Positions 670 to 31,674 of a stretch of 33,375 nt of DNA are shown here, piece after piece; position 1 is the stretch's first letter; each line of letters starts with the position of its first letter. The DNA comes from Klebsormidium nitens (lineage: Eukaryota > Plantae > Klebsormidiophyceae). The translations under genes were made by a program, and so were the position numbers. The notes beneath the pieces are model-generated. The model had not been told where the DNA came from. It was given only the letters and a program-made list of their open reading frames with translations, and did not search any database. The stretch is taken from the NCBI GenBank assembly GCA_000708835.1, contig DF237730.1, forward strand, positions 1 to 33,375, read 5' to 3'.

Positions 670-1128
670 GCATGTGAACACAGCATTAGAAGGCTACAAT
701 TTTCTCCCTATTTTCTCTGCGTGGTGAGGTCAACTTGCAAGCAGAGCGGGTTGAACAAGTGGTTAAGCGTTGCTTGGTTAAGAGATCAGGGCGCCACATG
801 GTCTCGAGGACCGTCAACAAAGCCGGCAGGAGGGTCCGTCCGCTCCGTTGACCGTATGAATAGCTGCGCCCTCCTTTTTTTTTCACAAAAAAAGGATGTC
901 CGACACCCAGCTCGGGAAACCGGCGCTTGGAATCGAAACGTTGAGCGGCCTCTGACTAACCACTAACTATTGATGTGGGTTAGAACCTCCATCCAAGTAG
1001 AACCACCATTGTTCAGCAGAAGGCTGAACAATCTGTGTTCAGAATCGGAGAAGACGCCAAGCAAGAGAGCTTAGACTGCTAAGTAGCGCCAGTGCGGGTA
1101 GACGGACGGTTGACTTGCCATCGGGCTG

Positions 1129-4100
1129 ATGGCTGCCCCGGAGCTCCCTGCGGACCTGCTGCCAGCAGAAGAGGACCTGCTGTATGAGGAGGAAATTTTG
1201 CGTGATCCTTTTTCCCTGAAATTGTGGTGGCGCTACCTCCAGGCAAGGAAGGATGCACCTGCAAGGAAGCGGAGGCTACTTTTTGAAAGAGCAATCAAAG
1301 CTCTGCCAGGTATGGCCTCCAGCTGCCTGCCTCTGACTTTGGGCAGCCTTTGCTGGTAATGATGGCGGGGAACAACGCCGATTGCTTTCTTCAATTCTAT
1401 CTGCCTAGTGCAAGCCGGCATGATGCCATGAATGTTTTCCGGCTGCATTCGTTTCTTGCCGCCTGTGTTCAGTGCTGTAAAGAACCTGCTTATTTCTATG
1501 AATGGCAAGAGATTACCTTGGCATTCAGGCTTTATTTCTGTGGTCCTGATCATCTCAGTTTGTCAAGCTGCTAGCTATCGTGGAAGTTCGTATTTCCAAT
1601 CTGTTAGTGCTTGCTAGTCCGATGCTTCTATCGAATTCAAGATTAGAAGCTCAGCCAGCTGCGAGTCATTGTCTGTCGCAACAGTTACAGTGAGGTCACA
1701 GTTGAAGCCATGTATCAAGGGGGGCCCATGCTGAGCCTCTAGGGGGTGTGTGGCTGCAGGTAGCTACAAGCTGTGGCATGCCTACTTGAGCGAGCGCAAG
1801 GCTGCGATGCGCGGGCAGCCGCTGGCGCACCCTGGGTACGAGGCGCTGAACAACACGTTTGAGCGCGCCCTGGTGACGATGCACAAGATGCCGCGCATCT
1901 GGCTGGACTACCTGGGCCTGCTGCTGGAGCAGCGCCGCATCACGCGCGCGCGCCACACCTTTGACCGCGCGCTCTGCAGCCTGCCCGTCACGCAGCACGA
2001 CCGCGTGTGGGAGCTGTACGTGCGCTTCATCCGCCAGGACGCAGTGCCCGTGGAGACGGCGCTGCGCGTCTACCGCCGCTACCTCAAGTTTGACCCCACG
2101 CAAGCAGAGGACTTTATCACTTTCCTCCAAGAGGTGAGTGCCTCAGCATCAAGACGCAGGTCACGATGCTTCAAGGCCATGTTTGAAAGTACTTCTGTTG
2201 TAAGGTTGAGAAAGTCTGGTTTTTGTCACGACTGAAGGATGTATTCTTGTCTTGGCAGCTTCTTTCATGCCTTTTCCCAGCCTCTCATCTGTTTCTATGT
2301 TGACCGATCTTTGCTTTGCAGAAGGGACACTGGCAGGAGGCTGCTGTCCGGTTGGCGGACTGCGTGAACGACCCCGACTTCCAGAGCGTGAAGGGCAAGA
2401 CGAAGCACCAGCTGTGGCTGGAGCTGTGCGACCTGGTGACCAAGCACGCGCAGCAGGTGACGGGCCTCAAGGTGGACGCCATCATCCGCGGCGGCATCCG
2501 CCGCTTCACCGACGAAGTGGGCCGCCTCTGGACGTCGCTCGCGGACTTCTACATCCGCAAGGGCCTGTTTGAGCGCGCTCGCGATGTGTACGAGGAGGGC
2601 ATGGCCAGCGTGCTCACCGTGCGCGACTTCAGCCTCGTGTTCGATGCCTACTCCCAGTTCGAGGAAAGCATGCTCGCGGCTAAGATGGAGGCGCAGGTAT
2701 TGCCACACTCTGTTGGCTTTTCATGTTTGTTGCCCGAAGAAACCACCAAGAGGCCTCTGATTGTTATGAGTGTTGAAATGAAGGAAGTCTTTGTTCGCCT
2801 GATATGCAATCCTGTATTGCATATTTTTCTCTTGCAACATATGGACTTTGACGATATAGGACTTGCAGTATTGTGGATACCACGTTTCGCTATGTGTTGG
2901 TTCAGATTCTTCACGAAACCAGCTGCAAGCAAAGATTCATCTTGCGCAAGGAATGGTTTGTCAAACGTGTTTTCCTTGTTACAGGAGGATCTTGAACCAG
3001 AGGGCGAGAGCCCTGACGTGGACCTGCGCATTGCCCGGCTGGAGGCGCTGATGGAGCGGCGGCCGGAGCTGGTGAGCAGCGTGCTCCTGCGGCAGAACCC
3101 GCACAACGTGCACGAGTGGCACAAGCGCGTCAAGCTGTTTGCGGGGGACCCCACCCGCCAGATCCTGACCTACACGGAGGCGGTCAAGACGGTGGACCCG
3201 CTCAAGGCGCTGGGCAAGCCGCACACGCTCTGGGTGGACTTCGCCAAGCTGTACGAGAAGCACGGGGACCTGCCCAACGCGCGCGTCATCCTGGACAAGG
3301 CCACGCAGGTCAGCCGCGCAACGTTGTGGGACCCGGCCGAGATCAAGCGTCCTGGACTTAACTCTGTCGGCTCGTCTGGTCGTGTACTTCTGTGTAAGCC
3401 CTTCTCTTATTGGACTTTATCGATCTCGATATCGACAGTAGCACTCCGGGATGTGAACTAGCCTGGACGAATAAGAGCACCCGCTGTTGCAGCCTTTGCA
3501 CAGCGGGCATGCGCTGAGTGCGTGCTGTGCGTGTGTGCCACAGGTGGGGTACAAGGCGGTGGAGGACCTGGCGGCGGTGTGGTGCGAGTGGGCCGAGATG
3601 GAGATCCGCGCACAGAACTTCAAGCAGGCGCTGGCGTTGTGTCGGCGCGCCACGCAGCAGCCGCCAGAGACCCTCGGCAGACTCCCCGACGGTGAGGCCT
3701 CACTGCATGCCGCTGGCAAATCCAACATGTACTCTGAAAGCGGCTGCTGATTAGGTGTTAATGTATGAGACATTCGACCCCTAGGTATAGCCAAGTCAGG
3801 TCCAAGGTTGTGCAACGTCGTCTCGAAGTGGCTCTTCCACTGATTGCCATGCTTGCTTGGCAGTGTGAGGGGCGACTCTTGGTCCCGCCGAGTGTAGAAC
3901 CCTTGCGTGAGGCCCTCTGACTCGTGCGTGGCTGTTGCAGGTGGGGCGGACGTGCCGGTGCAGCTGCGGCTGTACAAGAGCCTGAAGCTGTGGTCCTTCT
4001 ACTGCGACCTGGAGGAGAGCCTGGGCGACCTAGCCAGCACGCGCCGCGTGTACGAGAGGATCCTGGAGCTGCGCATCGCCACGCCCCAGATCATCATCAA

Positions 4101-6688
4101 CTACGCCGCGCTGCTCGAGGTGCGCCGCCTCCACCCCAGCCACCCGCACTGCAGTCCTGCGTACTGGAGCTCCTTCACATCTACTTGCACGTCTGTTTCG
4201 CTCCTCTGAAATCTTACATGCAGGCCGCTTGAGAGGAGAGGTTGAGAAGGCACAGTGTTCGTGGAACTGACTAATTCGTTAGATGCGTAGCACATTCAAG
4301 GGCTGCCAGGCCCGCCCCTGCAGTGTATTGACCGTGCTGCTGTCGGGCACTGTCTGCGTGCAGGAGGCGAAGTACTTCGAGGACGCGTTCCAGGTGTACG
4401 AGCGCGGCATTGCGGTGTTCAAGTACCCGCACGTCAAGGACATCTGGACCACCTACCTCACCAAATTCGTGGCGCGCTATGGCGGCAAGAAGCTCGAGCG
4501 CGCCCGCGACCTCTTCGAGCAGGCCGTCGAAAAGGTGGGCACCGTTGCTTGCGGAGTCTGGCCAGGTTCGGAGAGTCGCTTTCAATTTTCGTCGAGTTTC
4601 CCGCTGCAAAAGGGCGCTTGTTGCGAAGAGTGCGGCTAGTCACCTTGACAATGTCTTCTTATATGGCGATGAGTTCCTTCAAGCAGGTTTCTCTCCCGAC
4701 GTTGCTCAGGGCATGAAGCTAAGACGAGTCTGGACTTTGTACGGCATGTGTGCTCGTACATTGCTGTCCTCTCCCATCTCGAATTCTGCATTGAGCTACT
4801 GGTGCTGCCCACCGTCTCATGAAGATAACCCGTGAGCCAGCGAAATAACTCTTGAAACGAACAGCAAGAACGCCGTCGATTGCCATCAGCCGGTATGCAG
4901 TGAGCCTCGAGGTCTCGTCAGCAAGCAACTTCGTGTGCAACTGTGATGGATCCGAAGGCCCAATTGTCCGAGTGTCTGGCTGCTACCTCCTATGCGAGTT
5001 TCTAGAGGTGTTGAATTGTGCTTGTGTGCGCAGGCTCCCCCGGATGCGGCTCTGCCGCTCTATTTGGCATACGCGAAGCTGGAGGAGGACTACGGGCTGG
5101 CGCGGCACGCGATGGCGGTGTACGAGCGAGCGGTCAAGGCGGTGGCGGACACGGCCCGGATGCAGGTGTACGAGATCTACATCGCGCGCGCAGCAGAGTT
5201 CTTTGGGGCCACCCGCACGCGCGACATCTACGAGGTAAGGCTCACGCCCTTGGCAGAGGGGACGCCAACCAATCTTGAGGTCTCTGTGCCTGAGCACGTC
5301 TGCTGATGTTGGTATCCTGTCTGCTCTGCTGCTACTCGCGCCTGGCTGATTCTTCATGGAGCGGCTGTGCGTGCAGGCTGCCATCGAGTCGGGGCTGCCG
5401 GACAAGGACGTGAAGGCGATGTGCCTCAAGTACGCGGCGCTGGAGAAGAAGCTGCAGGAGATCGACCGCGCGCGCGCCATCTATGTGCACGCCAGCCAGC
5501 TCGCGGACCCGCGCACCGACCCCGCCTTCTGGCAGGAGTGGAACGACTTTGAGGTACGGAGAGCCCCGCAATAAGGCCGGATAGTTGCACGACTGCTTAG
5601 CAACGGTCACCGTGCTTCTGGTCACCGTCCTATTTCCCAGCTGATGGGTCAACGCATGCCCATGTGTCTGGTCGGTTGGACAGGCGTGTCTGGAGCGGGT
5701 CGGGCTCGAGGAGCTGCGCTGACCGTCGAATTGGCTTGAAAGGACGGGTTCGCATCGATAAGAATCAAATTGTGATCGATACCCGATGGATGCAATAGCT
5801 CTAGACTGTGGGTCATATCTAAGTCCTACCGTTACACGTCAAACAATTCATACAACCGCGCAGCATGGAGACCCAGACTGGTGCCTCACTGCTTATCTTT
5901 CTTCATATGTAGAGACTGTTCAGTGGCGCTGCTGGTTCCTTCTGGTTGCCTGGAAGTTGCTCTGTGAGTGGACCCACGTTCGAAACGGTATGTGTGCAGG
6001 TGCAATACGGAAACGAGGACACTTTCCGGGAGATGCTGCGGATCAAGCGCAGTGTGTCCGCTAGCTACAGCCAGGTGAGCCGCCGTTTGGGCAAGCGTCG
6101 CAGGATGGGGCACGCCTGTTGTTCCCGACGCATGCACGCGCGTATATTCGATCCAGTCCACCTTCCAAGGAGCATGTTTGAACTCAAGGTCAAAATGTGT
6201 GCCGTATGTGGCCTGTCATTCGGATCCAAACAGGCTGACCGTTGCTGGTTCGCTGCGTGCAGATGCACTTCCGCATCCCTGAGCATTTGTTGGTCAAGAA
6301 CCAGCCAGTGGAAGGGCAGGAGGCAGCCGCCCGGCCTGCGGTGGACGGCATGGCGGCGCTGGAGCAGCAAGCGCAGCCGAGCACGAGCCCCGGGGTGAGC
6401 AGGGCGCCGCAGTTTGTGAGCAGCGCGAGGGCCACCGCAGAGATGGCGCAGGCCATGGGGGTGGACGGGGGCACGACGGAAGTGCCGCTGAATCCGGACG
6501 AGATCGAGTTGAAGGACGAAGACGAGGAGGAGGGGGGGAGCGACGAGGAGGATGGCGTGCATCTGGCACAGAAGGAGGTGCCGGCGAGCGTTTATGGGGA
6601 GCTGGCAGACAAGGCGAAGAAGCAAGGGGAAACCAGGGAGGAGCCAGTAGGAGCATTAGAAAGGATCAAGCGACAAAGACGACAATAA
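1129..6688 (+). CDS. SYF1: Pre-mRNA splicing factor SYF1/XAB2 (HAT/TPR-repeat NineTeen-complex protein), 11 exons, about 876 aa
   Basis: Exons 1129-1309, 1760-2133, 2322-2696, 2985-3308, 3544-3691, 3941-4119, 4364-4534, 5034-5234, 5377-5553, 6000-6074, 6263-6688 (2631 nt; all introns GT-AG; phases consistent). Recognisable SYF1 motifs: YEEEILRDPFSLKLWWRYL, ALPGSYKLW, NNTFERALVTMHKMPRIW, VLLRQNPHNVHEW, RLYKSLKLWSFYCDLEES, FKYPHVKDIW, YGGKKLERARDLFEQA, EIDRARAIY, GNEDTFREMLRIKRSV, and an acidic tail NPDEIEL. Confidence 0.97.
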
Positions 6689-8165
6689 AACGGGTCTGAA
6701 GGTTGACCAGTAGTTTGCGTCTGTGTACTTGTGCTACCTTTTGCTATCCTCATCAACATCACTGAGTTCTAGTTCTAGTCGTTGAGCAAGCTTGCTCTGT
6801 GTATATTTCTTGATGTTTGCAACATGTGTCGACACCACGTTGGATGAATTAAGCTGGCATTCTTCAAGCAGAATACGACTCGGTGTGCAACGCTGTCATG
6901 GAGGGCAATATTTCGATCGTGCCTGACTTGTTTGGCCAGATCTGTCAAGTCCGTTTCTCTTTCATGTGTTCCCGCGGATGCATTCATGTGTTCCCTAGTC
7001 CATGCTCACATTCACAATCAAGTGTTGCAAGTTGAAGAGCTCATGCATGCACTTGAGTGCAGATTGCATCTGCACTCAACGTTATGATGCATGCACTGAG
7101 ATCCGCCCCCAGTGCAATGCAGACTCAACAGGTTCTGTCCAAAATTCGATCACGTGCCAGAGTATCTGTCCAATACCGTATTCCTAGGTACTTCCGACTC
7201 TCACGCGTTTTGACATCCGATCCGGGCGGAGCTCAGCCGCCGCCGCGGCCGCCCCCTATAGGCCCACACATTCAATTGAAGCCAATGATTATTACATCAT
7301 GGTTATCCACGTGTCGAATGCTGGGGCTTGTTGAAGTCTGACTCTGCCGTGGCACGTGCGCAGACACGTGTTGCAACTTGCAAGACTTACCCAAGACTCG
7401 AGTTCGCCGTTCACCCGGTCGGTGCTACCGTACCGGTACCGGTCTATTTTACCGTATTGTCATGCAGGGCGCTGGCCTGCCCGGGCGGTGGCCCCTCCAG
7501 GGGCCCGGGCCCCGCGCGGCCTTCAAGTTGGCATGTGCCCACATGCTATCGGAGCGCAGCGATGCGTTGGGGGTCCGGCGGCCAATCAGGGTTCAGTAAG
7601 TTCGTGAACTCTCTGAACCCTGGTTTCGCGATGAGACCTGTGAAGGAACCCTGAGACGTCCGATGAAAGAACTCTCTGAACCCTCAGTGGCCAATTTTGA
7701 ATTGACTGAGCTCATCCTGTTCATCCAGTCAGTAGCTGCCTACCTAACGGACGGCTCGGATTGCTTCTAAAGCGCGGGATGTGGATAGGGACGACGGCAT
7801 ACACTGATACTGTTACAACACTGGCAGGGTGCATGCAAGTCCAACTTGCATGCCACCTGCATGAGCTGCACTGTGACTGTACCCTACTGTCTTCTTACGT
7901 CAGAGTCAGCAATGGCGCTCATGTAGGTTTGTTGCTAGTGCTCTTCTGGCTGCTGCTTAGCTTAGTTGAGGGTTCCTTCAGCAACCTGCTTCCTGTCTTT
8001 GGGGGTGCTCAGTTGCTTAAGTTTAGCTGCTAGTTCATCTACTAGAGCCTGTAGATACTGAGTAGGTTGAGCAAGTGCTGTAGCAAGGCTGGTGACAATT
8101 GAGGCTGGTTCCCTATTGGCCACTGGCCACAGCTTGTGCCATCCAGGCTCCTGAGAGAAGCCATC

Positions 8166-11100
8166 ATGGCAGCAGTTGCGGGGACAGGCACTGATGATCC
8201 AGAGCTGCTGGGTGTCCCTGTAAAGCATGAGTATCTCTTGAAACGTGCCAAGCAGCGCATTTCGACGCTGCCCGTCTGGAATAACAAGGGAATCCTGGTC
8301 CAGAGATCAAAGAAGAAAGATGGGAAGAGCCTTGAGGTTCCAGTGATGGGGCCTGATCCTGATGTCTGGCCGCATTGGATCATTCCTGGAGCAAATCCTT
8401 CCTTCCGGAAAGATAGCATTTTGGAAGACTGGTACCTCAAGAACTGCAAGATTGCTTTCTGGCACCCAAAGCTCTTCTGGTACGTGTTTTTCCCGGGGCC
8501 CAACAAGCTCAAGTGCCCGGACTGCGGCTCAGCAGAGAGGGTGATTGGAGATGGGTGGTCTCCAAGACTGCGGGCGGTGTGCGAGCTGGACGGCACGCTG
8601 TTCATCATAGACTATCGCTACCGATGTGTGGGCTGCCCAAGTGAGTAATGATAATGAGCTGCTTTGCTAAATCAGGTACACTTAGTTTGTAGACCTGTCT
8701 ACGTTCTTTGGAAATTTGTTGCTGGGTGCCTGCAAAGCGTTTACCAGCTTGCGCGTGCTTGACTTCTCCAAGCAAGGGCTTACCAGGACCACATGTATAT
8801 GATGTGTCTGCAGATGCCAAGGAAGTTTAGTTGAGGCTATGTATTGCAGCTTGCATAATTCCAACACAGGCTTTGCAGTCAGTCTCATTACAGTTTGTAA
8901 TTTTGCCTTTGGTTATGATTGCGTTCCATGAGCGGTACAGATTCTGAGCTGCTTTCTTTCCATATGCAGAGACCACGGGTCAGGGGAAGGACCGTTGCTT
9001 TTCCAGCATGCACCCCACTGTGGTGGCTGGGCTCCTTGCTTTCATCCAGCGGGAGTTCGAAGAGGCTTTTCTGTTAACGCACAGAGCTGGCCTGAACAGA
9101 GGGCTTCTCCACTTTGTTGGTGCTCTTGCTGTCGAGGGAGTTGGGTTCTCAAAGTCTGAGAAACTTATTGAGGAGAGTCATGCTCGGGTGTTCTTTTCCA
9201 CTGAGGAGCAGTACTACCTCTATCGGGAAGCGGTTGAGCGGTCGGAGAGGGGCAGTTTGGGGAGTTTCTTTGGGGCTGCCAGTTCTAGCAAGGCCCCTGC
9301 GTTCGGGGGCTTTCGTGCGCCCGATGGCTACCGGGTATACTTACCCAGTTCTGGCTACTTAACGACCGCCTACTTGGCGGAGTTCAAGCGGCGGGAGAGG
9401 TGGCTGCAGCAGCAGCTAGAGCGCGTTGACGGGAAGTATCAACGCTTTGACCATACTTTCAAGGTGAGGTGCAAAAGGTCTACCAGCAAAGCACTTGGAA
9501 GCGGAAGTTTGGCAGTTACACGTTGCTCTTCTGGATATTGCGGTGGGGTATGCAATTGCCAAGTAATGCAACCTAAGAAAGCCCGTAGGATGCTTGTTTT
9601 TTGCGGCTGAAATTGCCTTCACCCTAGCAGGTTTTGCCGCAGCCAAATGAAAGTGACGCTCATATAAGCATCAAGTAGCATGAAGAATAATGATCCTACG
9701 ACCCTGATGCGTTGTGCAGGTAGCGAAGCAGGTGCGCGCTGCTGATGGGAGTAAAGCCGGGCTCAGTCTTTTCACGGGGATGAACAGCTACGGCGAGATT
9801 ACTTGCCAGGTGTCGACGCAGACGACGTCCATCGACGAGGTGGTGCCAGTGCTGGAGGGGCTGTCCTTACGCCCTGAGCGTTTTGGATTTTCTGTGAGTT
9901 GCTCTTTTGATCTTCTATCCTTTCTCCATGAAGACTTGTTCAATTTCTGAGTGTGACTTGCTTCTTGAATGCTGCTTCCTTGCAAGGTTTCTTGTAGCTC
10001 TGGCTTTCATGCATTGAGCGCCGTCTTGCACATTGCATACTCACAGACTCTTGCACGCTGCGCACTTACAGAGCAAAAATCCTCCCCTGATTGCTTGTTG
10101 CCTAATTGCAGCCAATTGAGAAGGTATGGGTGGACAATCCTCAGACCTCCAAGCACAAGATTTCCCGACCCCTGAAGTTGGACCCCAGTGACATCTTGCT
10201 TGACGCTCTTCATGGCATGATGGTGGTGGCGCGGACCGTCCCTGACGATCATTCTATGAAAGGTAAGAAGCCCTCCTATTTTGGCATATGCGGAGTCAAG
10301 TGACATTCAATCACGGTGTTGCAACCGTCCAACATTGCAAACGCCAGATTGGAAAAGTGTCCAGTTGTCTGCCGGCATTGCAAAGTTCCTTAGTTGTCCG
10401 CTTATACCAAGCATGCTGCCCGCTTATGACCAGGATCAGCCAGCTTATGGTGTCCTTTTGGTGTATGGTGAACAATTTGAGTCGCAAAATGTGTTGCGTT
10501 GTTGAGAAACTTTACTTATTCAGGTCATCTGCTGTACTGTGCTATTCTGTTGACCGGCTTTTGCCTCCATCTCTCTCCGCGGCTGGCCGCTTATGTCTTA
10601 TAATTGGACGATTTAGGCTCAGTGCTCCGCGGCGCCTGCATGAGGTGCCGCTGAAAACCAGGATCGCTCAAGTGTTGTTCTCACTTGAGATGGTCGTTTA
10701 CCATTCATATCAGGTGCCCTAACGCCTTGGTGTTTTTCACAGGTCCGCTCATGACCCGGATGAGCGAGGCAGTCTTTGACGTCGTTGAGGGCGACAAGGA
10801 CCTCGTGGTGAACTACCTCCGGGGCCAAGGGCTGTCCAACTCGGAGATAAGCGCCAAACCCGCGTCATACTTCAAGAAGCACTGTCGACGGTTCATCCCC
10901 GGTCCCATGGTGCTCGCGCAACGCCTGAGGAGGGTGTACGAGACCTACCGCTGCTCCATCGACGCTGCGACTGGAGCACCTCTGTTCAACAAAGCGACTG
11001 AGAAGGCTTTCCACAACCTGATCCGGTACTCTGAAGAGGGTTTGCTCAGCGGTGAGAAAGCTACAAATATTCTGTGCCTCTTTGAAATTATCTGATTGGA

Positions 11101-14052
11101 GTGGTTCCCCAGATTCTGGTCAGGTTTTGGTTCCCTGGTTTTCTTTACACAGAGCAGACCTGTCGTCATTTGAGAGGTTTAACCTCTTACAGAAAAGCGT
11201 CAAAGTATTGGGCTAATATAAGCGTGCTTCGACTTCAGGTATCATGAGAATGAATGTTTGGAGTCAAGCATCCTTCAGTTGGGCAGCTTTGTGGTCAAGT
11301 TCGAAGATGACATCTGATGCACGTTCACGCAGTTGGGACTCGCCTGAAAGGCCCTTTAACCGAGATGACCTGAATGTGGCACCTCTGAGATGCACATTTT
11401 CTGGTCCGATGCAGATCCCTTTGGAGTGGACCAGATGTACGTGCAGGTCGGGACGTGGGGGAACGGCATCCCGAAATATGCTGCCATACGGGGCTCGAGC
11501 CCTCTGGAGGGGTACCACAAGCACATTGCGCGAGTCCTCTCGGGGGCCAACAATTCTGCCGAGCTGGGACATGCCCTATTGCTCGACAAGAACCACCGTT
11601 GGAACACAAACGCTCGAGTTGCAAAGCGGGGCCAGAGGGATTTCAGCATGTACGACTTCAGGTACATCGAGAAAACAAAGCGAGCGTGCCAGCGCCTTGG
11701 AATGGCTGACCCCTATCCCGAATACGTGATCCAGGACTTCGAGCCGCGTGAGCGCTTTGGCTTCGACGTGTTGCCCCCCGGCTCCGAGCTGCTGGCGGGA
11801 GCTTCGGGGCCGCTCCCTACGGAGTTGCCGGTGGTCGAGGACGACGGGGGGGCGTCCTTCTTCGAGCAGGATCTCGAGCCGCGTGGTAAGTAGTCGTTGT
11901 GCAACTTTCACCTTATGTGGTCATTCCAGCTTGCTGCAAAGAGAAAACTAGAAATGCGCAAATCCATCTTTTTGGTTCCGTTCATTTGTGTTGGGCGCGG
12001 AGCCTGTTCTTTTTCAACTCAAGATTCTGTTGAAGCGGCGCTTGCCTGGACAAGTCCACTCATTCTCTGGTGCGTCACTGCTGATCCGGCACCTGAAACT
12101 CTGCCCTCGAAAAATGTCAAATGTTCGTATGTTCTTGTCACAGATCAAGCTCCGCCCATTGCGCCCATCCGAGACCGGATTCCAACGGCAGCGCCAGCGC
12201 CGGCGCTATCCGGAGGCAGCTTCCGTCCCGTTGTGCCGTCAAGCACAACCTATCCGAACGTTGAACCGGAGGGTGTATCTGCACGGCGATCCCAGTTGCC
12301 AACTCCTCTTGAAGGTACGATTCACAGGTCTCGTTTCTGCTTGCGGCCAGCCATGCTTGCACAGCGTCCGTCTTTTGACGTTATATCGAGAGATTTTCTA
12401 GGCCTTCGTGACGAGATTTCAACTTGCCGTGGACTTGCTCATTGATCAGCGTTTGCTTCCAAGTGAATCGCAACGGGGCCTCACGGCCGGCCGCGCTCGC
12501 TTGTTGTTTCAGGGCCAGGAACGGCTGCAGACGTCGCAGCGCATGGACAGCCCGCTCAGCCCGCTTCGCACATCTCTGGTTCTCACGGGGGTTCTCAAGG
12601 TGAGTAGAGGAGCACAACCGACTTTCGTCCATCTTCTATTGTCCCTATCTTACTGAAAGCATCACCTTGCAGCTGCTTTTGTGTCCACATCGAAGCTTGC
12701 AGATTGACTCCGCTTCGACATGCAAGCATGCCCAACCATCTAGGTGTGCTTGGGCTCAAAGCCCACTTCAATCAGATGAGCGTTTGAACAATCCGTTCTC
12801 AACCCCGTCCCGGTTACCTTGTGCAACAGGGAGAATCTTCTCCTTCCCGGTTCTCCCGTCCTCGCATGGAGCACGAGACCAGACCCCTGTCTTTCAGCAA
12901 CAAGGTAATCGACGGAGCAGAATCCTAGTTCTGATCATCATTTTTATGTTCGAAGCCGGGACTTAGCTTTGTGCATCTCAATCAAACTTGACTGTGAGCA
13001 AGTGCGACCTTTATCTGTTCAGCTGAACAACCATACTCATGCGTACTTGTGCAGGTGCATACCTTCCGCACCAGAATCCGCAGTCACAGGGCCCGCTCGG
13101 GGGTGCTCCCCAGTTCTCGTCATCAGGGTTCGGGCAGCCGTGGTTGCCTCACGCCCATCCAGGTGACCTCAACACGTATGCTCAGCCCTAGCCCATTCGA
13201 AAGCTGTGTTTGCTTTCGGGCAAGGCTATCAACACCTTATTGAGTCCAGATCTGAAATCTGGTAGCCTAAGTGGTTGAAGCAGCTCAATAGGGCGGTTCG
13301 AAGCTGACGTCACTCGTCGTTCAATGGATTGTGTTTTCTTGTATGCAGTCGGGCTCCAGTCTGCTCACAGTCGAGCCACGTTGGAATCGACAGTGGGCCT
13401 GTCTAGATTCCGAGGGTTTCCCATGGGAGGTGAGCAGCGGAAAAAGTCTGGGGCACGAAGGAAGCGCCTTGTCGACTTGGCCACGTCCCAGTTCTCGCCG
13501 ACGGAGGTGGAGTGGTTTGTTAGGCTGCAAAGCAAGCATCGCAAAGGAGCCTCAACAAACTGGCAGGCTATGTTATATGATTGGAATACTTCTCTGATCC
13601 AGCTGAAACTAGATCCTAACAAGGCTGCCCTATGCGAGGGTGTCAATCCAAAGTTGGTAGGGCAGTTGCAGGGGTTCGAGAAGAAAGCATACGACGCAAT
13701 CAATCAGCAAGCTTCCCAGCTCTCACGTGTCGCACTCAATCCGGCAAACGCCCAGCGCCACCCTCTGACACACTACACCGCCTCACGTTTTACAACGCCA
13801 GTCGCTACGTCATCTCCTAAAGCATATGCCGCTGGCGCTCACTTCTACTTCTCAGGTCATCCATCCCTTGCGCCTGTCCACAATCCTGTCTCTCAGGTCG
13901 TTGGGGTCAAAAGGCCACTCGAGGTAGGTCCCCCTAACAGGGGCGGTAAGAATACTCCGAAAACGTGCTTGAAGTGCTCTGAGGCGAGCGGACAACCAGT
14001 CTACAGAAAGGAGCACATTTGTCCATATAAAGCAGCGCAGGGGCCTTCATGA
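8166..14052 (+). CDS. DDE transposase of the C/DxxH class, most like Dada/DUF6729-type proteins; 11 exons, about 1072 aa, no internal stop
   Basis: Exons 8166-8640, 8970-9463, 9720-9893, 10112-10262, 10743-11051, 11415-11885, 12144-12314, 12513-12599, 12830-12904, 13055-13162, 13349-14052 (3219 nt; all introns GT-AG; phases consistent). Motifs: LKCPDCG..GWSPRLRAV..YRYRCVGC (C4 zinc finger), DHTFK (D at 9449), GMNSYGEI, VWVDN (D at 10133), DALH (10202-10213), HCRRFIPG, DPFGVDQMY, RGSSPLEGYH (E at 11507), HRWN, and C-terminal TCLKC..H.CP. The family assignment is from recalled motif patterns, not a database search. The small exons 7-10 are inferred from splice sites and phase. Confidence 0.85.
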
Positions 14053-14651
14053 GGTGTGGATAAGATGTTGATTAGAAAAGAGCCTCGAGGACAGGTTAGC
14101 AATTGTTGTAGACCTTGTGTTTTAAGACGCTTGGCTCTTCGTTTTTAACAGTATTTGTTTATTGTATCTATTTCGGCAAGTTGACATAGTGGACAATTTG
14201 CAGTGATGCTCCTACTGTCCGACATAGTAAACTGGAAGGATTGACCTTACAAAGCGAAATGCGGATATCAACATCCAGTAAGTGTATTAGCCGTGTGTCG
14301 ACTTCGCAATGGAAATCTGCTTGATCCAAATCGATTCCTGGTTCATGATATGCCTAGCTTCATTGGCATGATGCACATAGTACATGCGTAGTATGTATAA
14401 CATTCATTTGTGACAATATGCGGAGGACGCGTGCATGTTTTTGTATGTCGGCATATTTGATCGAAATACCTCAAAGTCCGCATATGAAATACAATGATCA
14501 CCTCATAAAGTCTGTACCAAAGCACATGGAGCTTATAGCATGCATGACTAGCTATTGTAAGCAATCAAACTTGATTTGTGGCAGCGCCGTTGCAGTACTT
14601 GTTGCTGCATCGATTTGCATCTTTTTAGTGCGCACACAGCTAGCAATCAAG

Positions 14652-14935
14652 CTATAGCGCGCGGCCGCTCAGCTGGGCCGAAATAGGGTTTTAGGCTCCA
14701 TAGGGTTTTTTAACGGTGTCGATTCGGACCGGGCGGCCGGGGGATTTGTCGAAGCACAAAGATGGGGGTCGAGAACCGCGTCGTGACTCTCCCGGGGGGC
14801 TCCAACGGGCATTTCAAATCTGTTGTAAGGACAATAATTACCAGCATTTTGGGGGGCTGCGCCCCCCAAAACAGGCCCTTCGGGCCTCAAAATGCCCCCC
14901 AACACACCGAATTTTTGCCCATGCTGAGCACTATA
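14652..14935. repeat. MITE-like or terminal structure: imperfect inverted repeats enclosing two perfect hairpins
   Basis: gctcagctgggccgaaat (14667-14684) is an imperfect inverted match to atttttgcccatgctgagc (14911-14929). Hairpins ttttggggggc-tgc-gccccccaaaa (14847-14871) and aggccc-ttc-gggcct (14873-14887). Confidence 0.55.

Positions 14936-15458: not shown

Positions 15459-31674
<16,216 letters not shown>

What the first reader, a model, noticed from the sequence alone, without database searches (positions are those of the whole stretch)
8166..14052. Intact, 10-intron Dada/DUF6729-like transposase gene in an algal-type genome
Seen in sequence: an uninterrupted spliced ORF of about 1072 aa with a C4 zinc finger, D (DHTFK), D (WVDN), DxxH (DALH) and, after a long insertion, E (RGSSPLEGYH), followed by HRWN. 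Established knowledge: a C/DxxH motif after the second Asp characterises the hAT/P/MuDR/Kolobok/Dada group of DDE transposases, and Dada elements are described as TIR-less and often specific for small-RNA gene targets. Inference: the spacing and the HCRR, DP.G..MY, RGS..LE..H and RWN motifs match what I recall of Dada/DUF6729 proteins. An intact catalytic triad with host-style introns means either a potentially active intron-containing element or a domesticated transposase. Either would be notable in a green-lineage genome.
Basis: partly seen in the sequence, partly recalled or inferred. Interest (0 to 1): 0.8.

Follow-up and report, generated by a model that had tools for sequence, protein, structure and literature searches.

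The report
Intact expressed Dada transposon in alga
This is a real, transcribed 11-exon gene for a Dada-type cut-and-paste transposase. It still sits inside its own roughly 7.4-kb transposon in a Klebsormidium-like green alga, so it is a well-preserved new member of a known transposon superfamily and not a domesticated host gene.

Summary
There are eleven + strand exons (8166-14052) and ten GT..AG introns. The reading frame is 3219 nt (1072 aa) with one terminal stop. Every junction appears in spliced contigs from public runs of three studies.

The protein belongs to the Dada superfamily (Kojima & Jurka 2013):
- Its exons hit an Ectocarpus protein that closely matches published Dada-1_ES.
- Its exon-6 profile also hits a Lottia protein with the Dada-U6 motif.
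- D319/D389/E566 plus DALH have Dada spacing (70/177 against 68/176).
- It has the N-terminal CCCC and C-terminal CCHC zinc motifs.
- A 1161-aa homologue folds as an RNase H-like DDE core, nearest the IS256-family ISCth4 transposase (Z 14.4) and then Hermes.

The new result is that the gene lies in a bounded element, about 7548-14919. Multi-copy relatives in Klebsormidium-like metagenome contigs have sharp ends, and the window keeps both terminal blocks (z 14 and 16). It also keeps an inverted G-rich subterminal motif and a candidate 6-bp duplication, CATGCT.

It is not inserted in a small-RNA gene. It lies between a SYF1 splicing-factor gene and a histidine-kinase gene. Dada was already reported in a green alga (Chlorella variabilis), so this is a new member of a known kind. 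Current mobility and copy number are untested. The same scan earlier noted related elements elsewhere in this genome.

The parts
7548..14919 (+). Proposed whole element, about 7372 bp: 5' terminal block, 11-exon transposase gene, 3' terminal block
   Evidence: The ends are inferred from homology to the sharp ends of multi-copy relatives. GC is 0.52 against 0.57-0.58 in the flanks.
7542..7547 (.). Candidate target-site duplication, left copy (CATGCT)
   Evidence: The same hexamer abuts the other end. Chance is about 2% for a shared 6-mer between two 14-nt windows.
14920..14925 (.). Candidate target-site duplication, right copy (CATGCT)
   Evidence: The alternative reading is an imperfect 8-mer, CACATGCT/CCCATGCT, matching 7 of 8.
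7548..7641 (+). 5' terminal block, with the subterminal motif GTTGGGGG (7566-7573) and a conserved CCAAT box (7582-7586)
   Evidence: Window 7569-7641 aligns to L002 343-419, directly inside that element's 5' end, at z 14 against shuffles.
14846..14919 (+). 3' terminal block, with a G6/C6 hairpin (14848-14870) and an inverted GTTGGGGG (14896-14903, minus strand)
   Evidence: It aligns to L004 9264-9333, which ends 2-3 nt before that element's 3' end, at z 16.
8166..8640 (+). Exon 1 (aa 1-159), with the CCCC zinc finger C117/C120/C154/C157 (nt 8514-8636)
   Evidence: The W.P...CPxC...RYxCxxC pattern is shared with relatives and with published Dada proteins.
8970..9463 (+). Exon 2 (aa 159-323), ending in DHTFK; first catalytic Asp D319 at nt 9449-9451
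   Evidence: It aligns to D307 of P0016, which lies on strand beta-1 of the model.
9720..9893 (+). Exon 3 (aa 324-381)
10112..10262 (+). Exon 4 (aa 382-432): second catalytic Asp D389 (10133-10135) and DxxH D412..H415 (10202-10213)
10743..11051 (+). Exon 5 (aa 432-535): helical insertion domain with HCRR
11415..11885 (+). Exon 6 (aa 535-692): RGSSPLEGYH with catalytic E566 (11507-11509), and HRWN
12144..12314 (+). Exon 7 (aa 692-749), start of a Pro/Gly/Ser/Ala-rich linker
12513..12599 (+). Exon 8 (aa 749-778), linker
12830..12904 (+). Exon 9 (aa 778-803), linker
13055..13162 (+). Exon 10 (aa 803-839), linker
   Evidence: This junction was seen in one run only (X4).
13349..14052 (+). Exon 11 (aa 839-1072): conserved C-terminal motif (P..E...F ... 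WN) and CCHC knuckle C1045..C1063 (13966-14022), then the stop codon

Best explanation
Window 7548-14919 is one structurally complete copy of a Dada-superfamily cut-and-paste DNA transposon in a Klebsormidium (K. nitens-like) genome. Its single gene is transcribed and spliced from 11 exons into a 1072-aa DDE transposase.

Shown:
- the gene model and its expression;
- homology to recognised Dada transposases;
- an intact D319/D389/E566 triad with DxxH;
- the CCCC and CCHC zinc motifs;
- an RNase H-like fold with a helical insertion domain in a homologue;
- conservation of both terminal blocks relative to relatives whose ends are defined by multiple copies with different flanks.

Inferred:
- The transposase binds the G-rich subterminal motif (GTTGGGGG or TTTCGGGGGG). 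The motif occurs once near the 5' end, and in inverted orientation near the 3' end, where extra copies form a hairpin.
- The DDE site cuts and rejoins the ends, and integration makes a short staggered cut, giving a 6-bp duplication (CATGCT here).
- This lineage inserts outside small-RNA genes, unlike the classic fish, Daphnia and Perkinsus Dada families.

Whether this copy can still move is not known.
For: Gene and expression:
- Ten GT..AG joints are seen in 100%-identical spliced contigs of four runs from three studies.
- The frame is open for 1072 aa.

Family:
- The exon-6 profile found 291 proteins at E<=1e-3 among 1.84 billion. These include Ectocarpus P0110 (E 1.6e-7) and Lottia P0108 (E 1.3e-7).
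- P0110 matches published Dada-1_ES, and P0108 carries the Dada-U6 motif.
- Pairwise BLASTP of exons 6 and 5 against P0110 gives 7e-14 and 2e-9.
- The motifs LDxxH, HCRR, DPxGV..Y, RGS..LE..H and xWN are collinear with Dataset S1.
- Ten distant relatives carry the 3'-5' exonuclease insert described for some Dada families.

Fold:
- The model of P0016:40-660 has pLDDT 80-98 over its core.
- It matches ISCth4 at Z 14.4, Hermes at 10.6 and the P element transposase at 8.3.
- The catalytic columns are conserved in the family alignment.

Element:
- L001, L002 and L003 share a sharp 5' end with unrelated flanks.
- L004 and L005 share a sharp 3' end.
- L004 has a 14-nt subterminal inverted repeat.
- The best non-coding alignments between the window and these elements fall exactly on those termini, at z 14 and 16.
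- GTTGGGGG occurs only twice in the 33 kb, inverted, 19 and 17 nt from the proposed ends.
- CATGCT flanks both ends.
Against: - Only one copy is visible, so the window's own ends rest on homology to elements about 50% identical in protein, and not on copy comparison in this genome.
- The hexamer duplication has about a 2% chance expectation. Its boundaries are offset by 1 and 3 nt from those suggested by a second candidate (CGGCAG, L002 5' flank against L005 3' flank).
- The conserved 5' block contains a CCAAT box, so part of its conservation could be promoter function.
- No small-RNA gene lies at the insertion site, which departs from the feature that gave Dada its fame.
- The fold evidence comes from a homologue with 26-41% identity, because the joined protein was not folded.
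- The runs are labelled RNA only by guess, although intron-skipping contigs can hardly be anything else.
- The species name rests on earlier notes of this scan and on the K. nitens paralogue; I did not verify it independently.
Confidence: 0.75

Rival explanations
1. It is a domesticated Dada-derived host gene. On this reading it is an immobile single-copy gene that kept its catalytic residues and serves a cellular function, as dDada does in cyprinid fish.
For: Only one copy is seen. It sits in a gene-dense spot between a SYF1 gene and a histidine-kinase gene. It has host-type introns, is steadily but weakly expressed in several studies, and has an intact frame. Its nearest relatives L001 and L002/L003 carry stop codons. 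Domestication of Dada is documented (PMC8869645).
Against: Both terminal blocks and the inverted subterminal motif are retained at the positions expected from mobile relatives. A candidate target duplication flanks them. GC and GC3 are lower than in neighbouring host genes. In the documented dDada case the catalytic residues are mutated; here they are intact.
Confidence: 0.15
2. It belongs to a superfamily other than Dada, such as a Mutator/IS256-like or hAT-like lineage, and resembles Dada only through the shared C/DxxH group.
For: The nearest solved fold is the IS256-family ISCth4 transposase, followed by hAT Hermes. An 8-mer reading of the duplication (7 of 8) is possible. There is no small-RNA target.
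Against: There is direct, significant and collinear sequence similarity to proteins matching published Dada-1_ES and Dada-U6. The Dada-specific CCCC and CCHC fingers and the C-terminal motif are present. No Pfam MULE, hAT or IS256 domain appears in any exon or in 34 long relatives. No solved Dada structure exists, so an IS256 best hit is what the 2013 paper's proposed relationship predicts.
Confidence: 0.07
3. It is a structurally intact but immobile relic. On this reading the copy looks complete, but its ends or its protein no longer support transposition, and its transcription is incidental.
For: The subterminal inverted repeat is weaker here (8 exact nt) than in L004 (14 nt). Only low-depth contigs are seen. 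No second copy was found with the tools at hand.
Against: There is no lesion in 3219 nt of coding sequence, and all conserved family residues are present. The sibling copies in the metagenome have already acquired stops.
Confidence: 0.3

Closest known systems
Dada-1_ES (Ectocarpus siliculosus) and its database look-alike P0110 (Ectocarpus sp., CAN0051384.1)
   Same: The DxxH-to-xWN region is collinear (LDxFH, CRR, DP.GV..Y, RG(S/T)..(L/V)EGYH, RWN..., NRG). BLASTP of exons 5 and 6 is significant. The C-terminal P..E...F...WN motif is shared.
   Different: The Ectocarpus proteins carry a DEDDy 3'-5' exonuclease inserted between the second Asp and DxxH. The window protein has no such insert. Identity is only 27-38%.
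Dada-U6/U1/tRNA families of fish, Daphnia, molluscs and Perkinsus (Kojima & Jurka 2013; Kojima 2022)
   Same: - DDE plus DxxH with near-identical spacing.
- CCCC and CCHC fingers.
- Many introns (11 exons in Dada-U6_DR).
- No terminal inverted repeats, but short subterminal inverted repeats.
- 6-7 bp duplications.

   Different: Those families insert at fixed sites inside U6, U1, 5S or tRNA genes. This element and five related flanks show no small-RNA gene.
Dada-1_CV (Chlorella variabilis), the previously reported green-algal Dada
   Same: It is from the green lineage. It has the same CPxC...C..C finger, the DHTF first-Asp motif and WVD second-Asp motif.
   Different: It is much more divergent in the E region (RSSSQLEC, with no EGYH or RWN). 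No ends or target are described for it in the text read.
K. nitens hypothetical protein GAQ92967.1 (P0012) on scaffold DF238177.1, and the 9.4-kb element noted earlier in this scan (s1-305465)
   Same: Same genome and same protein family (33-38% identity over exons 2, 3, 5 and 6).
   Different: It is a different family-level lineage. There is no DNA similarity and no shared terminal motif.
ISCth4 (IS256 family) and Hermes (hAT) transposases
   Same: An RNase H-like DDE core interrupted by an all-helical insertion domain. In a homologue's model Z is 14.4 (251 residues, rmsd 4.5) for ISCth4 and 10.6 for Hermes.
   Different: About 10% identity and no profile-level sequence match. The zinc fingers, ends and host range differ.

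Membership tests
Dada superfamily of DNA transposons (Kojima & Jurka 2013) | Significant sequence similarity to recognised Dada transposases | tested here: met
   The exon-6 profile hits P0110 (E 1.6e-7) and P0108 (E 1.3e-7) in a 1.84-billion-protein library. BLASTP against P0110 gives 7e-14 and 2e-9. P0110 matches Dada-1_ES of Dataset S1, and P0108 matches the Dada-U6 motif, both by eye. A direct alignment to Repbase sequences could not be run.
Dada superfamily of DNA transposons (Kojima & Jurka 2013) | DDE triad with a DxxH motif after the second Asp | tested here: met
   D319, D389, D412-x-x-H415 and E566 give spacing 70/177, against 68/176 in Dada-U6_DR. D389, D412, H415 and E566 fall in conserved columns of the family alignment. 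D319 aligns to D307 of P0016 in the pairwise BLASTP of exon 2.
Dada superfamily of DNA transposons (Kojima & Jurka 2013) | N-terminal CCCC and C-terminal CCHC zinc fingers | tested here: met
   C117/C120/C154/C157 and C1045/C1048/H1061/C1063. Both are aligned with relatives and fit the published pattern.
Dada superfamily of DNA transposons (Kojima & Jurka 2013) | No terminal inverted repeats; short subterminal inverted repeats | tested here: met
   No inverted repeat of 25 nt or more in the window. GTTGGGGG lies inverted 19 and 17 nt from the proposed ends. L004 has a 14-nt subterminal inverted repeat.
Dada superfamily of DNA transposons (Kojima & Jurka 2013) | Target-site duplication of 6-7 bp | tested here: inconclusive
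   CATGCT lies on both sides, with about 2% chance expectation. An imperfect 8-mer is also possible. There is no second copy or empty site to confirm it.
Dada superfamily of DNA transposons (Kojima & Jurka 2013) | Insertion inside multicopy small-RNA genes (true of the families with defined ends, not of all named Dada families) | tested here: not met
   No tRNA or Rfam family in the window, in its flanks at a permissive threshold, or in the rebuilt empty site (tRNA scan only). None near the related copies either.
Dada superfamily of DNA transposons (Kojima & Jurka 2013) | RNase H-like catalytic fold | tested here: inconclusive
   This is shown only for the homologue P0016. The window's joined protein was not folded, by the rule on spliced models.
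Pfam DUF6729 (PF20499) | Score above the gathering threshold | tested here: inconclusive
   No hit for exon 1 or exon 2 taken apart, even at E<=1. The domain would straddle the exon 1/2 junction. The homologue P0016 scores 32.6 bits against a cutoff of 27, and one other relative passes.
hAT, Mutator/MULE and IS256 transposases | Match to their Pfam or NCBIfam transposase domains | tested here: not met
   None in any exon or in 34 long relatives. Only fold-level similarity was found.
Domesticated transposase gene | Loss of transposon ends, and a single orthologous syntenic locus across species | tested here: not met
   Both terminal blocks are retained. Synteny across species could not be tested with the collections available.

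The most novel reading that the evidence does not exclude
This could be a currently active copy of a streptophyte-algal Dada lineage that has given up small-RNA-gene targeting. It would be the first Dada lineage with defined ends outside such genes, recognised through G-rich subterminal repeats. It could serve as a native transposon-tagging tool in Klebsormidium, a model for the origin of land plants.
Probability: 0.25. Interest if true: 0.55.

Novelty: new member of a known kind. Interest (0 to 1): 0.4.

Why it matters
Dada is one of the least studied DDE superfamilies. No member has been shown to move, no structure exists, and ends are known only for families lodged in small-RNA genes. This copy, together with its Klebsormidium-like relatives, gives three things:
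- an intact, expressed transposase with both ends preserved;
- a candidate binding motif;
- evidence that one algal lineage inserts in ordinary intergenic DNA.

That makes the family testable at the bench, for example by expressing the protein and supplying a donor with the two terminal blocks. It also names a large set of algal, chytrid and brown-algal "hypothetical proteins". It does not change what is known about transposon biology in kind.

Tried and rejected
- Exon-wise Pfam and NCBIfam scans gave only chance zinc-ribbon hits.
- The peptide-pattern scan of metagenome contigs with the exon-6 alignment found no relative.
- A DNA scan for the 3' hairpin motif returned more than 120 loci. None had the transposase or the extended terminal block, so they are unrelated G6/C6 hairpins.
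- The word search with the 41-row alignment A7 returned only P0016 itself.
- Exact look-ups of the window's exon-6 and exon-11 ORFs found nothing on record, so they gave no copy count.
- Exon 11 found no significant match among the session's proteins by jackhmmer. Its kinship rests on tblastn to L002, L005 and L009 and on an alignment of conserved motifs.
- Target duplications could not be settled in the metagenome copies, because the 5' and 3' flanks lie on different and possibly chimeric contigs. L002's own two flanks do not match, whereas the L002 5' flank and the L005 3' flank share CGGCAG.
- Searches of the papers library for DUF6729, and for Dada together with Klebsormidium or Chlamydomonas, found nothing relevant. 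The hits were for the DADA2 software.
- The ESM Atlas feature search gave only unnamed eukaryotic clusters.
- Considered and rejected: a KDZ/Zisupton-type or CACTA-type transposase, because there was no supporting hit of any kind.
- Not done, by rule: searching or folding the joined 1072-aa model.

Full report
**Observation**

The + strand between 8166 and 14052 carries a series of long open frames separated by short stretches with stops. I placed splice sites by eye and then tested them with public reads.

Contigs from four runs of three studies lie on the stretch at 100% identity. They skip ten segments, each bounded by GT..AG:
- 8641-8969
- 9464-9719
- 9894-10111
- 10263-10742
- 11052-11414
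- 11886-12143
- 12315-12512
- 12600-12829
- 12905-13054
- 13163-13348

The runs are labelled RNA only by guess, but contigs that skip introns at exact splice sites must come from spliced RNA. One contig lies inside intron 5 (11100-11366), so some unspliced material is present.

Joined inside a script, the eleven exons give 3219 nt (1072 aa) with a single stop at the end.

Each exon was searched by reference, and the joined frame was used only to count length, stops and motif positions.

**Family**

Taken one by one, the exons hit nothing in Pfam or NCBIfam. A word search with exon 6 found ORF fragments of 57-65% identity on metagenome contigs. It also found a Klebsormidium subtile transcript that joins the homologous exons 4, 5 and 6 exactly as modelled here.

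Because the family was still open, I ran the exhaustive search with a profile of exon 6. It found 291 proteins at E<=1e-3 and 43 at E<=1e-10. Named sources among the long hits are:
- Klebsormidium nitens (GAQ92967.1, 33-38% identical)
- Pleodorina starrii
- Nephroselmis pyriformis
- Ectocarpus sp.
- two chytrids
- the limpet Lottia gigantea

All are labelled hypothetical. One 1161-aa relative, P0016, is collinear with exons 1, 2, 3, 5 and 6 and passes Pfam DUF6729. Ten more distant relatives carry a 3'-5' exonuclease domain upstream of the exon-5/6-like part.

**The link to Dada**

Kojima and Jurka (PMC3706591) define Dada by these features:
- a DDE triad with DxxH after the second Asp;
- an N-terminal CCCC finger and a C-terminal CCHC finger;
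- many introns;
- absence of terminal inverted repeats, with short subterminal ones instead;
- 6-7 bp duplications;
- in some families, a DEDDy exonuclease between the second Asp and DxxH.

Their Dataset S1 is held as text. The Ectocarpus hit P0110 matches Dada-1_ES closely over about 200 residues. The Lottia hit P0108 carries the Dada-U6 signature around the catalytic Glu. Exons 6 and 5 of the window align to P0110 collinearly, at E 7e-14 and 2e-9.

The window protein has Asp-Asp-Glu spacing of 70 and 177 residues, against 68 and 176 in Dada-U6_DR. The N-terminal pattern W.P...CPxC...RYxCxxC, the C-terminal P..E...F...WN motif and the final CxxC...H.C knuckle are all shared with relatives and with the published sequences.

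That link therefore rests on database proteins that match the published ones by eye.

**Fold**

The joined model could not be folded under the rules, so I folded P0016:40-660 with a 41-row alignment that included the window's exons as separate rows. The N-terminal 240 residues are poorly predicted. The core (model residues 250-590) has pLDDT of roughly 75-98.

The core shows the expected order of strands and helices. The first Asp lies on the first strand, the second Asp just after the fourth strand, then comes a long helical insertion, and the Glu lies on the following helix.

Foldseek ranks the IS256-family ISCth4 transposase first, followed by foamy-virus integrase, Hermes and the P element transposase. 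The second-look aligner gives Z 14.4 for ISCth4 (251 residues, rmsd 4.5), 10.6 for Hermes and 8.3 for the P element. It is evidence about a homologue, not about the window protein itself.

**Transposon or domesticated gene**

The metagenome relatives settle what the family is.
- L001, L002 and L003 are 84-99.9% identical in DNA across exons and introns. Their similarity begins at the same nucleotide, and upstream of it the three sequences are unrelated.
- L004 (the same contig as L002) and L005 are 97.8% identical over 3.08 kb and diverge at one point downstream of the gene.

That element is about 9.0 kb. It has no terminal inverted repeat, but it has a 14-nt inverted repeat, GGTGTTTCGGGGGG, lying 16 and 14 nt inside its ends. 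The K. subtile transcript is 76-100% identical to its exons, so the host is Klebsormidium-like.

I then compared the window's non-coding flanks with these elements. The best local alignments fall on exactly those termini:
- window 7569-7641 against L002 343-419, z 14 against shuffles;
- window 14846-14916 against L004 9264-9333, z 16.

This holds although the proteins are only 40-65% identical and the introns do not align.

GTTGGGGG occurs only twice in the 33-kb window. The two copies are in inverted orientation, 19 and 17 nt inside the ends inferred from the alignment. The 3' block also holds a G6/C6 hairpin.

The hexamer CATGCT abuts both inferred ends. Chance expectation for this is about 2%. 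An imperfect 8-mer is an alternative reading.

The segment has lower GC (0.52) than its flanks (0.57-0.58), and lower GC3 (0.65) than the neighbouring SYF1 exon (0.76).

Together these points favour a transposon copy with both ends preserved, spanning about 7548-14919. The sibling copies L001 and L002/L003 have in-frame stops in exon 1; the window copy has none.

**Target**

Classic Dada families sit inside U6, U1, 5S or tRNA genes. Here there is no tRNA and no Rfam family:
- in the window at gathering threshold;
- in the flanks at a permissive threshold, where only chance-level rows appeared;
- in the rebuilt empty site, which was scanned for tRNA genes only;
- in any of the related loci.

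The element lies between a SYF1-type splicing-factor gene and the hybrid histidine-kinase gene described by another report of this scan. Two relatives lie next to LTR-retrotransposon genes. This lineage therefore does not show the small-RNA targeting of the fish, Daphnia and Perkinsus families. The 2013 paper also lists families, including Dada-1_CV of Chlorella variabilis, that are not named after a target.

**Mechanism**

Shown:
- an intact, expressed DDE transposase gene of the Dada superfamily;
- conserved terminal blocks with an inverted G-rich motif;
- a candidate 6-bp duplication.

Inferred from the family and the fold class:
- The N-terminal zinc finger and adjacent region recognise the subterminal motifs.
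- The RNase H-like site with D319, D389 and E566 cleaves the ends and joins them to a target cut with a 6-bp stagger.
- The Pro/Gly/Ser-rich linker (exons 7-10) tethers a conserved C-terminal module with a CCHC knuckle whose role is unknown.

Whether excision goes through hairpins as in hAT, or through circles as in IS256, cannot be said.

**What remains open**

- Copy number in this genome could not be measured. Exact look-ups of two exon ORFs found nothing. The word search with a family alignment returned only its own first row. Two metagenome scans gave nothing usable.
- Synteny and selection across species could not be tested.
- The species name comes from earlier notes and from the K. nitens paralogue.

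**Novelty and verdict**

Dada is a described superfamily and was already reported from a green alga in 2013. The searchable library holds no paper that mentions it in Klebsormidium or that mentions DUF6729. This scan had already noted related elements elsewhere in the same genome.

What this case adds:
- an intact and expressed copy;
- a direct link of the algal "hypothetical protein" family to Dada;
- defined ends and a candidate binding motif for a lineage that inserts outside small-RNA genes.

I rate it a new member of a known kind, of moderate interest.

Noticed in passing
window 1750-6690 (+): A SYF1/XAB2-type pre-mRNA splicing factor gene lies here. Its HAT-repeat N, M and C domains are spread over several exons, directly upstream of the element.
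   Followed up: partly
L009 (K. nitens scaffold DF238177.1) 759-9452: The public model of the paralogue GAQ92967.1 ends at 5569. An exon-11-like C-terminal piece lies at 6557-7237, inside the next annotated gene, which also hits the Plant_tran and DDE_Tnp_4 (Harbinger-type) domains. The two models probably mix two transposases.
   Followed up: partly
L001:5946, L002:1111, L003:5200: The related metagenome copies carry an in-frame stop in the exon-1 homologue, so they look decayed. The window copy is intact.
   Followed up: partly
L002 3720-4483: In the Klebsormidium-like relatives, exon 5 is split by an extra intron. Its second half matches twice (4087-4236 and 4316-4483), which suggests an internal duplication.
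   Followed up: no
L056, L061, L022, L025, L032, L069, L081 (samples Ga0187892/Ga0187893): The G6/C6 hairpin TTYGGGGGGCTNNGCCCCCCRAA recurs on long metagenome contigs, sometimes in tandem at about 128-nt spacing. No Dada transposase is nearby. It is unexplained and probably unrelated to this element.
   Followed up: partly
window 11100-11366: One contig of run X3 lies wholly inside intron 5. This could be a retained intron, pre-mRNA or DNA carry-over.
   Followed up: no
window 7542-7549 and 14920-14925: The candidate duplication CATGCT(A) resembles ATGCTA, the tRNA-Ala target of fish Dada-tA (PMC8869645). No tRNA is present here, so this is probably coincidence.
   Followed up: partly
window 31445-31526: Two tandem copies of a 41-nt unit (95% identical) lie near the far end of the neighbouring kinase gene region.
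   Followed up: no
L003 2179-2949 and L006 433-1929: LTR-retrotransposon genes lie next to related Dada copies: reverse transcriptase in L003, and integrase with a chromodomain in L006. This suggests insertion into repeat-rich DNA in those genomes.
   Followed up: no
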